Positions 26,448-46,412 of a stretch of DNA of 64,000 nucleotides are shown piece by piece. The notes under the pieces were generated by a model. The model saw nothing but the letters and a program-made list of their open reading frames with translations. It did no database searches and was not told the origin of the DNA. The number at the start of each line of letters is the position of its first letter. Within the stretch, counting starts at the first letter, position 1. The translations under genes and the position numbers were made by a program. Origin of the DNA: Zootoca vivipara (lineage: Eukaryota); assembly GCF_963506605.1 (NCBI RefSeq), contig NC_083282.1, positions 78,802,001 to 78,866,000 on the forward strand, read 5' to 3'.

Positions 26448-26594
26448 NNNNNNNNNNNNNNNNNNNNNNNNNNNNNNNNNNNNNNNNNNNNNNNNNNNNN
26501 NNNNNNNNNNNNNNNNNNNNNNNNNNNNNNNNNNNNNNNNNNNNNNNNNNNNNNNNNNNNNNNNNNNNNNNNNNNNNNNNNNNNNNNNNNNNNN
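26448..26594. other. Assembly gap (147 N)
   Basis: Run of N. Confidence 1.
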
Positions 26595-27614: not shown

Positions 27615-27864
27615 CAGTGGTACCTCAGGTTAAGTTCCCAATCCGTTCCGGGGTGCCGTTCACACCCCAAAAAGAACTTAACCCGAGCGGCACTTTAGCG
27701 CATGCGTGAAGTGCTGATAGAGCACTTCTGCGCATGCGCGAAGCACGCAGAACGCTTCTGCGCATGCGCACAGGGCAGAACCTGGAAGTAAACACTTCCA
27801 GGTCCGCCAAGTACGCAACCTGAAAGTATGCAACCCGCAACGTACTCAACCCGACGTATGACTG
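27615..27864. mobile_element. Tigger-like MITE with GCGCATGCGC repeats
   Basis: TA|CAGTGGTACCTCAGGTTAAGT...ACTCAACCCGACGTATGACTG|TA. Confidence 0.8.
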
Positions 27865-36267: not shown

Positions 36268-36757
36268 TCAGAATCATGTATGTGAGCTTTCAGCTACAAG
36301 GCTGATTCAGTTTCTCTTTAAAGTCAACATATGGAGTAAAAAAATGCCATACATTTTTATTGAACAGCTGCTCGATCAATCTCTCTCCTGCCTGTCCTGG
36401 GCAGCAGTTAGTCACACATGCATGAGTTTCAAGCAGCTACTACAACCCCAAAGTGTAGTGTATAAATGGGGATAAACAGTGTAATTTCATGGTTAGAGAA
36501 AATTGTGTAGGTCCAGCTTATTATTTAACTGGAGTTGTGCTATGTTGGATACTGCTGAAAACCAACAAATATGCCTTCCTACCCCCAGAAAGGTATATAT
36601 ACACACATATGGAAGTTTCCCCCAAGTTTCCAACACACACGCCAGCCAATAGAGTTAAAGGTATGATTAAACTTATGCTTTTTAAAATGGTAAACCGCCC
36701 TGGAAGTTCAAGGTCGGAATATAAAACGTGTAAATTCTCAAATTAATGAATACTTAC

Positions 36758-36791
36758 CCAATCCAAGTTTCTTTGCTCTGGGTCTTAAAAG
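36758..36791 (-). CDS. DPM1: DPM1 exon 3 (LLRPRAKKLGL)
   Basis: 34 nt, ttttacag| acceptor and |gtaagt donor. Confidence 0.96.
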
Positions 36792-37727
36792 CTGTAAAAT
36801 ATCAGTGGAAGAAATGAGTAACAGATTAATTGCATTAAATGATCCATGATTGTAGGTTTTTTATTATTATTTCAGCTAAATATTAATATTCACTCAGTTG
36901 CTCTTCTCTCAAATAGGATTGCTACACTTCCATATTTACAAAGCAACATGCCTTTAACATTTGGATTACACAGACATTAATTCAGATCAAAACAGTTATA
37001 GAATATAGAGCTGTAGACCAAGTTTAGAAGATGTGGTTGGCTGAAGATGGGTAATAGAGCTGAAGCTGACTGAATCAGCTGTGGGTGGTGCTTAGTAGTC
37101 CTGACTTTGGGTCTTTGAAGTCATTGCGATGTCAGGTGATTGGCAGATGGTCAACCCACCCACTTGTTCATTTCAGCTCAAAGAGCCAAAAAAGTCCCCC
37201 TCCCTTAGCATAAATTACGGCTCACCACCAAGCACTTCAAAGTAAGGGAGGCTTGACTAGCAGGGTTAGAACATACACCTGCCATGCATCTATGCTCTCT
37301 TAGGTGCTCACATAAAAACTGCAGGGGCTTAGTGCGAGTAAGTTTGTTCATTATCAGAAATATGTACATTGCATTTTTAAAAAAATCATGCATTTCCAAT
37401 TTTTCTTAGCAACACTTCATCAAGAGGTATTCGACTTAATTCTGCAAATTTGAGTGGGCACAGTATCAAATGAATGAAAATGTATTGGATAATATCCAAC
37501 TGAGTCACAATCAGAGTAGAACCCATTCCCATTGCAATTAATGGACAAGTAGAGTCCACTGATTTCAATGGATCTACTCAGACTACAACCAACACTGAAT
37601 ACCATCCGCTGTATATGCAGCTGAAGAAGCATTGCTAACACTGCACCTGGATCCCCTGTTGCATTGCTGAATATGATAAACTTGTGTCACAATGCAAAAA
37701 TTATGGGGAAAGTGGTATCTGGTAGAT

Positions 37728-38440
37728 CAGTGTTTCTCAACCTTTTTTGGGCCACGGCACACTTGTTCCGTCAAAAAAATCACGCGGCACACCACCATTA
37801 AAAGATGGGGCAAATCCTGGGGGTTGGGAATGGGTGGGGGACTGAGGAATAGGGAGGATGAGGTTGGTGTACTTGCTGAGAGAGCCCTCGAGCACCGCCT
37901 CCGTCGTCCTGCCTGCCGCCAGCCCCCGCTCCCTCCTGGGCTGGCCGCGGCTGAGCTGGAGCTGCTGCTGCTGCCGCCACCGCCTCCTCCCTCCGGCCTC
38001 CCCGCTGGTGTAGCCGCCGCCACCGCTGCTCCTTGGCGGCCCGAGAGCCCTCCCCAGCTGGCGGAGGAGGACGGCGAGGAGCCCGCTGAGGTGGGGCGGC
38101 TGCTGCTGCGGCTGCGGCTGCTGCTGTTACTGCCGCCGCTGGACGGGGCTGCTGCTGCTCCAGAGTCCCCGCCGCCCTGCGCCGCTGCCTTCTCCATTGA
38201 GCGGCGGGGAGAGCGCGAGGAGGCGGCCTCGGCCATGAAGCGCTGCCTCGCTCAGGGAGCGAGCGCGAGGAGATGACGGAGGAACACCCTTCGCGCCCTC
38301 GCGCCCTCCAGACTGACCCGGCCGGCTTCCTTTCCTATTGGCGGCCGCAAATCGCCCTTCTCGTTGCCTCACGTTGCGGCACAGCAGCCACCGTCTCGCG
38401 GCACAGTAGTGTGCCGCGGAACAGTGGTTGAGAAACGCTG
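37728..38440. mobile_element. hAT (Charlie-like) element carrying captured host sequence (Pack-TIR)
   Basis: TIR CAGTGTTTCTCAACC / GGTTGAGAAACGCTG and perfect 8-bp TSD TGGTAGAT (37720-37727 and 38441-38448). It lies in DPM1 intron 2. Confidence 0.93.
37857..38236 (-). pseudogene. OSBPL10: Captured fragment of OSBPL10 coding exon 1
   Basis: MEKAAAQGGG...[23 protein letters not shown]...AASPGG...GRR, then after a frameshift AVLEGSLSKYTNLI. This parallels the human OSBPL10 N-terminus as I recall it ([32 protein letters not shown]...[23 protein letters not shown]). It is truncated just inside the PH domain. Confidence 0.85.
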
Positions 38441-38674
38441 TGGTAGATTTCTCACCGACAGCTATTATAGAGCATCCTCTGAGGTCAAGTGATGACAACT
38501 CTAAGAATTAGCACAACTTTATAAAGTGAAAATTAAAACTGCATCCAAATATGATAATTCAGGAAATTTCAAACTACTCCCAATGTTGCTACCCATGTTA
38601 TCAATCTGAATAAACTGGTAAACAATTCAGTGTTAAGAAAATGAATAACCCATGCGTTCTAATTTCATCCCTTA

Positions 38675-38878
38675 ATCAGTTCCACAGAGGCGTTCGTAAA
38701 CGGAGGCATTTGCTCCCCGAAGGCACGCTTCTGCGCACGCGCTGCGCAGATCGCTTCTGCGCATGCGCGATCTGCGCATCCGACTCCGCGGAACCCAGAT
38801 GTAAACACTTCCGGGTCCGTGGCGTTCGTAAACGGAGGCGTTCATAAACAGAGGTAGGTGTAAACTGAGGTTCCACTG
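38675..38878. mobile_element. Tigger-like MITE, left end truncated
   Basis: Right terminus GAGGTTCCACTG|TA, repeated GGCGTTCGTAAACGGAGGC, CpG-rich core. Confidence 0.75.
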
Positions 38879-38889
38879 TAATGTTATTA

Positions 38890-39063
<174 letters not shown>

Positions 39064-41071: not shown

Positions 41072-41380
<309 letters not shown>

Positions 41381-42691
41381 ATGGCAGCGGGAAAGCGCGC
41401 TGAGGGGAGCGTGTTGGGAGGCGGCGGCGGCGGCGGGTCCCAGGAGGCGGAGGCGCCAGGCCCTCTTCTCCCGCTGAGCCGGCTGGACATCCGGCGCTAC
41501 TCCCGCCAGCTGGTTCTCCCGGAGCTGGGCGTGAGCGGCCAGCTGCGGCTGTCGGGCTCCTCGGTGCTGGTGGTGGGCTGCGGAGGGCTGGGCTGCCCCG
41601 TGGCTCAGTACCTGGCGGCGGCGGGCGTGGGCCGCTTGGGCCTGGTGGACCCGGACGTGGTGGAGTTGGACAACCTCCACAGGCAGGTGCTGCACCGGGA
41701 GAGCCGCCTGGGCACCCCGAAAGCGCGCTCGGCGGCCTCGGCGCTGGGGGAGCTCAATTCCCGGGTGCGCTGCGTGCCTTACGAGCTGTCCCTGTCGCCC
41801 AGCAACGCCCTGCAGCTGGTCCGAGACCACGACGTGGTGGCCGACTGCTCGGACAACGTGCCCACCCGCTACCTGGTCAACGATGCCTGCGTCCTGGCCG
41901 GGAAGCCCCTGGTCTCCGCCAGCGCCCTCAGGCTCGAAGGGCAGCTGGTGGTGTACAACCACCAAGGAGGCCCCTGCTACCGCTGCCTGTTCCCCAAGCC
42001 GCCCCCTCCGGAGACGGTCACCAACTGCGCTGATGGAGGGGTCCTGGGGGTCGTGCCTGGCATCCTCGGTACCCTCCAGGCCTTGGAAGTGATCAAGATC
42101 GCCTCTGGCATGGGTGCCACATGCCACAGGTCCATGCTGCTCTTCGACGCCCTGGAAGGCAGGTTCCGCCACATCAAGCTGAGGCCCAGGGACCCCAGGT
42201 GTGCTGTCTGTGGGGACAGCCCCACAGTGACCGCCCTCCAGGACTACGAGGAGTTCTGTGGGTCATCGGCCACAGACAAGTGCCGGGCGCTGGACCTGTT
42301 GAGCAGCGAGGAGAGGGTGTCTGTGGAAGAGTACAAAAGGGTCCTGGACAGCCAGGCTCCTCACGTGTTGGTGGACGTGCGCCCGCCAGTGGAAGTGGAC
42401 ATCTGCCGCCTGCCGCATTCCCTCCACATGCCCTTAAGTAAGCTGGAAGGAGGGGACGAAGGAGCCCTGAAGTCCCTGCGGCAGAGGATACACGAAGCGA
42501 GGCAAGGGGCGGACGACAGCTCGGCTCTCCCCCTTTACGTGGTCTGCAAATTGGGAAATGACTCTCAGAAGGCTGTGCGAATATTGCAGGGGTTGTCTCA
42601 GAATGAACTAGGTCCCATTTCTGTCAAGGATATCAGGGGAGGGCTGATGGCATGGGCTAGCAAAATCGATGAAGAGTTCCCCCAGTATTGA
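41381..42691 (+). CDS. MOCS3: Adenylyltransferase and sulfurtransferase MOCS3 (UBA4), intronless, 436 aa
   Basis: RYSRQL, GCGGLG nucleotide-binding loop, [12 protein letters not shown] and CAVC zinc motifs, C-terminal rhodanese domain with CKLGNDSQ, and synteny with DPM1. Confidence 0.98.
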
Positions 42692-45954: not shown

Positions 45955-46412
45955 CAGGAGTTTTCAACCCTTTTGAGGTCACAGCTCCCTTGACCAACTA
46001 CATTCTTTCTGTGGCACCCCTGTGGGGCTCAGGAGCCCGGTTACGTCATCCCTTGCCTGCTGAGTTGACAGTCTCTCACCCTTTTTCAGACACCCTCCCT
46101 TGTGGAGTGTTCCCTCAGCCTCAGTCTCCCCTTTCCTTGGGAGTCCTCCAGGCAACTGCCACAGCCACCCCTGGTCTCTGAACCGTCTCGGCTCCTGGCA
46201 ACCCAGCCCCAGAAGCACCATTTGCCTGGGGAGCTTGTAGCCAGGGCTGCTGCAACAAACAGCTGTGCAAGTCTTTAAAAGGCAGGGATGGGAGAGGGCA
46301 TCAGAGGAGGGAGGGAAGGAAAGAGCAACAGAGGCCAGTGTTGCCCTCAGCACCCCTGACCATCAATCAAAGGCAGCCCACGGTGCCACGGCACATTGGT
46401 TGAAAACCACTG
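45955..46412. mobile_element. hAT (Charlie-like) MITE
   Basis: CAGGAGTTTTCAACC / GGTTGAAAACCACTG termini and 8-bp TSD CTTTAGAG. Confidence 0.88.

What the first reader, a model, noticed from the sequence alone, without database searches (positions are those of the whole stretch)
37728..38440. hAT Pack-TIR carrying a captured OSBPL10 promoter and exon 1 inside DPM1 intron 2
Seen: a 713-bp element with hAT TIRs and a perfect TGGTAGAT TSD, whose CpG-rich core (about 37857-38375) is not transposon-like. On the minus strand it has a CCAAT box (38341-38337), a GC-rich leader and ATGs at 38236 and 38197. It encodes MEKAAAQGGG...[23 protein letters not shown]...AASPGG...GRR and, after one small frameshift, AVLEGSLSKYTNLI. 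Knowledge: this matches my recollection of the OSBPL10 (ORP10) N-terminus and the first strand of its PH domain, and OSBPL10 is not part of the ADNP-DPM1-MOCS3 block. The upstream CCAAT region points to DNA-level capture rather than retrocopying. Inference: this is a Pack-MULE-like gene-capturing DNA transposon in a lizard. CpGs are retained, so it is young or unmethylated. The cargo lies in the same sense as DPM1, so it could act as an internal promoter or alternative first exon upstream of DPM1 exons 3-9.
Basis: partly seen in the sequence, partly recalled or inferred. Interest (0 to 1): 0.9.

Follow-up and report, generated by a model that had tools for sequence, protein, structure and literature searches.

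The report
Lizard hAT transposon carrying OSBPL10 start
A 713-base cut-and-paste (hAT, SPIN-like) transposon in intron 2 of the lizard DPM1 gene carries a broken copy of the upstream region and most of the first coding exon of an unrelated gene, OSBPL10; this is a real case of a kind of gene-fragment capture already described in animals.

Summary
Window 37728-38440 is a non-autonomous hAT element. It has 15-bp terminal inverted repeats (14/15), a perfect 8-bp target-site duplication TGGTAGAT, and subterminal GCGGCACA repeats. Its left end matches the published Anolis SPIN_NA1 terminus 16/16.

The core at 37857-38375 is 72% G+C with CpG o/e 0.80. On the minus strand it encodes an OSBPL10-like N-terminus. 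The only database hit is turtle OSBPL10 (E 5.8e-5 against 5.8 billion proteins). The alignment score is 206, against about 85 ± 9 for shuffles (z about 13.5). After one frameshift comes the first PH-domain strand, 10/12 identical.

The copy is dead. It is frameshifted, keeps about 12 PH residues, and stops about 7 codons before the end of exon 1, so the native splice donor is missing. It lies in DPM1 intron 2, in the same sense as DPM1.

- the parent locus
- copy number
- presence/absence polymorphism
- transcription or promoter activity

An earlier, unchecked note of this scan reports a second OSBPL10-carrying hAT elsewhere in this genome, and about 25 notes describe similar Pack-hATs there. 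Verdict: a new member of a known kind (Pack-TIR, Tan et al. 2021), of moderate to low interest.

The parts
37720..37727 (.). Left copy of the 8-bp target-site duplication TGGTAGAT
   Evidence: (D19)
37728..37743 (+). Left terminal inverted repeat, CAGTGTTTCTCAACCT
   Evidence: I5. It matches the SPIN_NA1_AC terminus CAGTGKTTCTCAACCT 16/16 (table in PMC3014272 read).
37728..37856 (.). Left hAT arm, about 129 bp. It includes subterminal CGGCACA-type repeats at 37752-37765 and 37783-37795. The origin of 37796-37856 is unknown (hAT interior or filler).
   Evidence: D10, D12, I7, I9. OSBPL10 similarity stops at 37857.
37857..38197 (-). OSBPL10-like coding part of exon 1. It runs from MEK... to ...GRRR in one frame (38197 to about 37898), has a frameshift between 37906 and 37892, then reads AVLEGSLSKYTNLI (37898-37857). 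It is truncated about 7 codons before the exon-1 end.
   Evidence: P0001, E 5.8e-5; 10/12; 83.6 bits, 62/113; z about 13.5; exon-1 end in orthologues
38198..38375 (-). CpG-island-like sequence upstream of the OSBPL10-type ATG: 178 bp, G+C 0.685, CpG o/e 1.10. It holds an in-frame upstream ATG at 38236 and a CCAAT at 38341-38337. It could be 5' UTR with or without a proximal promoter; this was not resolved.
38376..38440 (.). Right hAT arm, about 65 bp, with GCGGCACA repeats at 38376, 38398 and (inverted) 38410, and the right TIR at 38426-38440
   Evidence: D11, I3, I5, I23; right terminus 14/16 to the SPIN_NA1_AC consensus
38441..38448 (.). Right copy of the target-site duplication TGGTAGAT
   Evidence: D19
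38947..39045 (-). Host gene DPM1, exon 2 ([17 protein letters not shown]...GSDKI); context only. Boundaries are approximate to within a few bases.
   Evidence: translation; Glycos_transf_2, E 6.6e-8
36756..36791 (-). Host gene DPM1, exon 3 (LLRPRAKKLGLG); context only
   Evidence: translation. Assignment to DPM1 is by comparison with my own knowledge of the DPM1 protein.

Best explanation
This is a non-autonomous hAT transposon of the SPIN (Buster/Charlie-like) group whose interior has been replaced by 519 bp of host DNA. That DNA comes from the 5' end of an OSBPL10-type gene: about 140-180 bp upstream of the start codon plus 341 bp of coding exon 1. It is therefore a 'Pack-hAT', or Pack-TIR.

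The likely mechanism is inferred from published models, not shown here. While a double-strand break or stalled fork in a hAT element was being repaired, synthesis switched template to the open, GC-rich OSBPL10 CpG island and back. This left hAT ends around a gene fragment. The composite was then probably moved by a hAT transposase supplied in trans, into the TGGTAGAT site in DPM1 intron 2.

The captured piece cannot make protein. It is frameshifted, keeps only about 12 residues of the PH domain, and lacks the exon-1 splice donor. It most likely sits as a neutral passenger, transcribed only as part of the DPM1 pre-mRNA intron.

The confidence given (0.85) is for the core claim, a hAT element carrying an OSBPL10 5' fragment. 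I put transposition of the composite at about 0.6.
For: Shown:
- TIRs 14/15, a perfect 8-bp TSD and subterminal repeats.
- Left terminus identical to the published SPIN_NA1_AC terminus; the central TAGA of the TSD fits that family's NYYTARRN target.
- No transposase ORF and no Pfam domain.
- Cargo matches OSBPL10. Turtle OSBPL10 is the sole hit, at E 5.8e-5 in 5.8e9 sequences.
- Unfiltered tblastn gives 83.6 bits and 62/113 identities.
- The alignment score is 206, against a shuffle mean of 80-89, sd 9, maximum 129.
- The match is collinear from the initiator MEK to GRRR, followed by 10/12 identity to the first PH strand in a shifted frame.
- Scores fall with phylogenetic distance: turtle 206, mammals 145-179, fish 71 or less.
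- No further OSBPL10 exon lies in the window, and other GC-rich stretches score 37 bits or less.
- The element lies between DPM1 exons 2 and 3.

Inferred:
- The capture mechanism (PMC8277862).
- Mobilisation of the composite.
Against: - The lizard's own OSBPL10 locus was not seen, so parentage is inferred from a turtle orthologue at 55% identity over a low-complexity region.
- With BLAST's default masking only the short PH-start block survives, weakly (E 0.006-0.07 in the window).
- phmmer against 1.8e9 representatives gave nothing.
- No second copy was examined here, so transposition of the composite is unproven, as opposed to in-place filling of a resident hAT.
- The right arm is only about 65 bp. 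In one tested Buster element, ends of 58-64 bp gave very limited activity (PMC12637253).
Confidence: 0.85

Rival explanations
1. In-place origin. An ordinary SPIN-like MITE inserted into DPM1 intron 2 first. Later a break inside it was repaired by gap filling, with the OSBPL10 5' end as filler. The TSD would then date the MITE's insertion, and the composite never moved.
For: Tan et al. found that most animal Pack-TIRs are single-copy and arise this way; only 4 families were multicopy (PMC8277862).
Against: Gap filling shows a strong bias towards nearby donors (57% within 15 kb), and no OSBPL10 exon lies in this 64-kb window. The replaced part would be almost the whole interior, whereas in-place gaps were a median 4.6% of the element. 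An earlier unchecked note reports another OSBPL10-carrying hAT on another piece of the genome, and two independent in-place captures of the same exon would be unlikely.
Confidence: 0.3
2. The cargo works as a portable CpG-island promoter or alternative first exon inside DPM1. It would start transcripts that splice to exon 3 at 36791.
For: - Same orientation as DPM1.
- CpG o/e 0.8-1.1 against 0.14 in the left flank.
- CCAAT about 100-145 bp upstream of the two ATGs.
- About 30% of animal Pack-TIRs are transcribed, mostly as chimeras with their host gene.
Against: The native exon-1 donor was not captured. Only weak cryptic donors follow. No expression data could be laid, and no listed holder of the stretch is on record as RNA. 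In the published cases transcription was mostly driven by the host gene's own promoter.
Confidence: 0.1
3. The fragment came from OSBPL10 mRNA (an RNA-templated or retrocopy-type event) rather than from genomic DNA.
For: This copy contains no intron sequence, and the 140-180 bp upstream of the ATG could all be 5' UTR.
Against: There is no poly(A) and no 3' end. A 5'-only fragment is the opposite of what LINE-mediated retrocopying gives (established knowledge). The fragment lies precisely between hAT arms.
Confidence: 0.05
4. The OSBPL10 likeness is a chance effect of G/S/A/R-rich low-complexity coding in a GC-rich hAT interior.
For: BLASTP with composition adjustment finds no alignment for the long frame. 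phmmer, Pfam and the Atlas give nothing.
Against: Composition-preserving shuffles never exceed 129 against the observed 206. The match starts at the initiator MEK, is collinear, and is followed at the right spacing by the non-repetitive LEGxLSKYTNL block. Other GC-rich stretches of the window score 37 bits or less against 83.6.
Confidence: 0.03

Closest known systems
Pack-TIR / Pack-hAT elements of animals (Tan et al. 2021, Nat Commun 12:4280, PMC8277862), e.g. the frog Pack-hAT-N8_XT carrying 291 bp of the CAPSL 5' UTR
   Same: A non-autonomous TIR transposon with intact ends and TSD, whose interior is a short host gene fragment. hAT is the commonest carrier superfamily (208 of 370). The frog example also took the 5' end of a gene. 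The element is intronic and co-oriented with its host gene, as in most transcribed cases.
   Different: The cargo here (519 bp) is larger than the published median of 224 bp. It replaces nearly the whole interior of the element. Whether it is multicopy, which is rare in that survey (4 families), is not established here. The paper's main text does not mention lizards or Anolis; its supplementary species list was not read.
SPIN_NA1_AC / SPIN-group non-autonomous hAT elements of Anolis carolinensis (Novick et al. 2011, PMC3014272)
   Same: The terminus matches CAGTGKTTCTCAACCT (left 16/16, right 14/16). The TSD is 8 bp with central TAGA, as in the family's NYYTARRN target. The size class is similar (SPIN_NA1_AC is 745 bp).
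   Different: TSD positions 2-3 are GG, not YY. That paper's main text contains none of the terms 'captured', 'host gene' or 'exon'.
Pack-MULEs of rice
   Same: They acquire host gene fragments, prefer GC-rich sequence, and raise local G+C sharply (PMC5861414). Here a 72% G+C island sits in a 39-40% intron.
   Different: A different superfamily (Mutator, 9-11 bp TSD, long TIRs), in plants, with thousands of elements and documented expression and translation.
OSBPL10 (ORP10), as represented by P0001 (Chrysemys picta bellii) and P0002/P0003/P0033/P0039
   Same: The N-terminal low-complexity region runs from the initiator MEK through [30 protein letters not shown]..GRRR, followed by the start of the PH domain, LEGxLSKYTNL.
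   Different: It is only a fragment. It is frameshifted, has about 12 of about 95 PH residues, and has no lipid-binding (ORD) domain. It lies outside the OSBPL10 locus, inside a transposon.

Membership tests
hAT superfamily, non-autonomous element | 8-bp target-site duplication | tested here: met
   TGGTAGAT on both sides, 8/8 (D19)
hAT superfamily, non-autonomous element | Short TIRs with a terminal YARNG motif | tested here: met
   CAGTG... and CAGCG..., 15-bp TIRs 14/15 (I5). The motif definition is from PMC3014272.
hAT superfamily, non-autonomous element | No transposase gene (depends on a transposase supplied in trans) | tested here: met
   713 bp in total. The ORFs have no Pfam domain.
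SPIN group (SPIN_NA1_AC-like) | Terminus CAGTGKTTCTCAACCT / CAGYGGTTCTCAACCT | tested here: met
   Left 16/16, right 14/16 to the SPIN_NA1_AC terminus (consensus)
SPIN group (SPIN_NA1_AC-like) | Target consensus NYYTARRN | tested here: inconclusive
   TGGTAGAT has the central TAGA, but GG where YY is expected. The neighbouring element's CTTTAGAG fits fully.
SPIN group (SPIN_NA1_AC-like) | Similarity of the subterminal and internal sequence to the family consensus | not testable with these tools
Pack-TIR (Tan et al. 2021) | TIR element with recognisable ends whose interior is non-transposon host sequence | tested here: met
   Interior 37857-38375 encodes the OSBPL10 N-terminus.
Pack-TIR (Tan et al. 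2021) | A parental copy of the captured sequence elsewhere in the same genome | not testable with these tools
The window itself holds no other OSBPL10 exon.
Multicopy (transposed) Pack-TIR | Two or more copies with the same chimeric junctions and different TSDs | not tested
There is no second copy in this window.
Functional OSBPL10 paralogue | Intact reading frame with a complete PH domain and ORD domain | tested here: not met
   Frameshift between 37906 and 37892. Only about 12 PH residues remain and no Pfam hit is found.
Processed pseudogene / retrocopy | 3' end of the mRNA with a poly(A) tract, and LINE-type flanking duplications | tested here: not met
   The fragment is 5'-only with no A-run, and is bounded by hAT arms.

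The most novel reading that the evidence does not exclude
This lizard may harbour a recently active SPIN-like hAT lineage that repeatedly picks up CpG-island 5' ends (promoter plus first exon) of host genes and spreads them as multicopy families. That would be a vertebrate counterpart of rice Pack-MULEs. The OSBPL10 element would be one such family, scattering portable and possibly unmethylated CpG islands into introns, where some could act as new internal promoters.
Probability: 0.25. Interest if true: 0.65.

Novelty: new member of a known kind. Interest (0 to 1): 0.35.

Why it matters
Taken alone, this is one more dead gene fragment inside a transposon in an intron, with no sign that it alters DPM1. 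Its value is as a well-anchored example. The cargo is identified by tool results, and the breakpoints are mapped to within a few bases.

It belongs to what the scan's earlier notes suggest is an unusually rich set of hAT-borne first-exon and CpG-island fragments in this one lizard genome. Suppose genome-wide analysis confirmed many multicopy families with a bias towards 5' ends. That would go beyond the published animal survey, which found only four multicopy families in 100 genomes. It would also give a vertebrate system for studying how DNA transposons acquire and spread promoters.

Tried and rejected
1. phmmer of the 169-aa ORF against 1.84e9 representatives gave 0 hits. The query is low-complexity and the database very large, so this is uninformative.
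2. Pfam on both reading-frame pieces gave nothing. This is expected, since only about 12 PH residues are present.
3. BLASTP with composition adjustment of the long frame against P0001 gave no alignment. I replaced it with an unfiltered search plus shuffle controls.
4. ESM Atlas gave no usable hit.
No read-depth, polymorphism, empty-site or RNA evidence was obtained.
The turtle OSBPL10 locus, the source organism and other copies could not be fetched.
7. A protein search used an ORF that crosses the flank/hAT/cargo junction, hoping to catch Logan ORFs from other insertion sites. It found nothing. This says nothing about copy number.
8. A second protein search with P0001 found mammal, bird, fish and frog OSBPL10 fragments, but none named as squamate. 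Full-length OSBPL10 is outside that tool's length range.
9. I considered that 37796-37856 might be OSBPL10 intron 1 and rejected it. Exon 1 should continue with ...LQGWQN, and no frame encodes that.
10. The two hAT elements in the window share only about 30 terminal bases. The second one therefore cannot serve as an 'empty' reference for the family.

Full report
**Observation**

The stretch 37728-38440 (713 bp) is bounded by 15-bp inverted repeats, CAGTGTTTCTCAACC and the reverse complement of GGTTGAGAAACGCTG, which are 14/15 complementary. It is flanked by a perfect 8-bp direct repeat, TGGTAGAT, at 37720-37727 and 38441-38448 (I5 and D19). The terminal pattern, allowing up to 2 mismatches, occurs three times in the 64-kb window against 0.11 expected. 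Two of these are the ends of this element. The third is an end of a second element at 45955-46412.

Inside the ends are repeated GCGGCACA-type motifs in both orientations, at 37752-37765, 37783-37795, 38376-38383, 38398-38405 and 38410-38417. This is the usual layout of subterminal binding repeats in hAT elements, a point from established knowledge.

G+C rises from about 0.40 in the flanks to 0.68-0.78 in the core. CpG o/e is 0.80 for 37857-38375 and 1.10 for the part upstream of the ATG, against 0.14 in the 928 bp to the left. The minus-strand ORF, the two ATGs (38236, 38197), the CCAAT (38341-38337) and the shifted frame reading AVLEGSLSKYTNLI are all present as described.

**The transposon**

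The left 16 bases are identical to the terminus that Novick et al. list for SPIN_NA1_AC of Anolis carolinensis, CAGTGKTTCTCAACCT. The right end differs at 2 of 16 positions (table read, PMC3014272). That family's target consensus is NYYTARRN. The TSD here has the central TAGA but GG at positions 2-3. The TSD of the neighbouring element, CTTTAGAG, fits fully.

The element is too short for a transposase, and its ORFs have no Pfam domain. It is therefore a non-autonomous hAT element of the SPIN group. An earlier follow-up on this genome used the same label for another element. I confirmed the label here only for the termini, because no family consensus was available.

**The cargo**

A word-indexed HMMER search of the 169-aa minus-strand ORF against 5.8 billion proteins returned a single hit, P0001. 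This is a 200-aa 'oxysterol-binding protein-related protein 10' from the turtle Chrysemys picta bellii, at E 5.8e-5 and 41 bits.

The region is rich in G, S, A and R, so I tested it against composition:
- Unfiltered tblastn of P0001 against the element gives 83.6 bits, with 62/113 identities.
- A Smith-Waterman score of 206 compares with means of 80 and 89 (sd about 9, maximum 129) for 2000 shuffles of either partner, so z is about 13.5.
- The reversed sequence scores 85.

The alignment begins at the initiator MEK and is collinear through [39 protein letters not shown] and GRRR. Immediately after, in a frame shifted by one base, LEGSLSKYTNLI matches P0001 residues 90-101 at 10/12. Pfam places the start of the PH domain of P0001 at residue 90.

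With BLAST's default masking only this short block survives, at E 0.006-0.07 for the whole window.

Other N-terminal OSBPL10 fragments score in order of relatedness: mammals 145-179, fish 71 or less. Elsewhere in the window, GC-rich stretches reach 37 bits at most, and there is no PH-domain continuation. This is therefore not the OSBPL10 locus itself.

**Breakpoints and state of the copy**

Two mis-annotated mammalian fragments (P0033, P0039) read into intron 1 after ...[11 protein letters not shown](R). Several Logan ORFs enter exon 2 at RYFVLDF. Exon 1 of the gene therefore ends about 7 codons beyond the last OSBPL10-like codon of the cargo, at 37857. After that point no frame encodes LQGWQN.

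The capture breakpoint thus lies inside exon 1, and the native splice donor was not taken. The other boundary is near 38375, where the GCGGCACA repeats of the right arm begin.

The cargo consists of 341 bp of coding sequence plus 178 bp upstream of the MEK codon. A frameshift lies between 37906 and 37892. Orthologues have nine bases (EPA) between RRR and LEG, whereas the cargo has five. The fragment cannot encode a protein of the family.

**Host context**

On the minus strand:
- DPM1 exon 1 is at about 41072-41170, head to head with MOCS3 (41381-42691; ThiF plus Rhodanese domains, E 2e-80).
- Exon 2 is at about 38947-39045 (Glycos_transf_2, E 6.6e-8).
- Exon 3, LLRPRAKKLGLG, is at 36756-36791.

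**Mechanism**

Shown: a composite of hAT ends and a host 5' gene fragment, with the footprint of a hAT integration.

Inferred: how it formed. Tan et al. (PMC8277862) describe two routes. One is transposition-independent gap filling of a resident element, which typically gives single copies and uses donors mostly within 15 kb. The other is template switching at a stalled fork followed by transposition, which gives multicopy families with distant donors.

Three things favour the second route:
- The donor is not within this 64-kb window.
- Nearly the whole interior is replaced.
- An unchecked first-reader note (s1-853059) reports another hAT carrying the upstream region, exon 1 and splice donor of an OSBPL10-like gene on another piece of the genome.

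I could not examine that copy, so I put composite transposition at about 0.6 and in-place filling at about 0.3.

Whether capture was at the DNA level is not settled by this copy, which contains no intron. An mRNA origin is unlikely on general grounds, because the fragment is 5'-only and has no poly(A).

**Function**

The promoter or first-exon idea remains untested and is somewhat weakened. The exon-1 donor is missing. The best donor-like sites downstream of the ATGs score only 4.7-5.3 bits on a simple matrix, and they lie in the hAT arm.

The CCAAT, the high CpG o/e and the orientation are compatible with a captured proximal promoter, but they do not demonstrate one. High CpG content may mean a recent insertion or germline hypomethylation, and I could not separate the two.

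The most likely state is a neutral intronic passenger, transcribed only within the DPM1 pre-mRNA. In Tan et al. most transcribed Pack-TIRs were likewise driven by the host gene.

**What could not be done**

The parent locus, copy number, empty sites, polymorphism and RNA evidence are therefore all open.

One untested lead comes from the word shares. By my own arithmetic on the coordinates, flanks alone would give about 0.46, and flanks plus hAT arms and junctions about 0.62. Runs X8-X10 show 0.48 and X1-X3 show 0.60-0.64. This could reflect presence/absence among individuals, or merely drop-out of the 75% G+C core from short-read contigs.

**Comparison and novelty**

This is a Pack-TIR as defined by Tan et al. 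2021. In that survey hAT is the leading carrier (208 of 370), and the frog multicopy example also carries the 5' end of a gene. The preference for GC-rich gene sequence parallels rice Pack-MULEs (PMC5861414).

The scan has already noted about 25 'Pack-hAT' candidates in this genome. Three follow-ups judged comparable cases real, and one of them called its case an already known kind.

I therefore class this as a new member of a known kind, with interest 0.35. A wider possibility deserves a genome-wide test: that this lizard has an active hAT lineage which systematically acquires and amplifies CpG-island first exons. That is not established by this locus.

Noticed in passing
window 45955-46412: A second SPIN-like non-autonomous hAT element, 458 bp, with a perfect TSD CTTTAGAG and TIRs CAGGAGTTTTCAACC / rc CAGTGGTTTTCAACC. 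It shares only about 30 terminal bases with the OSBPL10 element. On the minus strand its interior has a TTTTAAAG motif and an ATG-led frame of about 47 codons that ends at an AGG|GTGAGA donor-like site. This might be another captured promoter and first exon. CpG o/e is 0.16, so it looks older or methylated.
   Followed up: partly
window 37400-38800 (runs): The word shares fall into two groups among runs of the same species: 0.60-0.64 and 0.48. These fit 'flanks plus hAT arms' and 'flanks only'. That hints at presence/absence polymorphism of the insertion, or at drop-out of the GC-rich core from short-read contigs.
   Followed up: no
window 41072-41381: DPM1 exon 1 (minus strand) and MOCS3 (plus strand, a single 436-codon ORF with ThiF and Rhodanese domains) lie head to head about 200 bp apart. 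This is a shared bidirectional CpG-island promoter region.
   Followed up: partly
window 26448-26594: A run of 147 N (assembly gap or masked stretch), left as it is.
   Followed up: no
window 38640-38920 and 27725-27806: A G+C-richer stretch (0.50-0.56) just right of the element has short internal direct and inverted repeats and an 80-84% match at 27725-27806. It is probably another interspersed repeat in DPM1 intron 2.
   Followed up: no
proteins P0033, P0039 and P0021-P0038: Several database 'proteins' named or clustered as OSBPL10 fragments are ORFs that run from exon 1 into intron 1, or from intron 1 into exon 2. They were useful here for placing the exon-1/exon-2 boundary, but they are mis-annotations, not isoforms.
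   Followed up: partly
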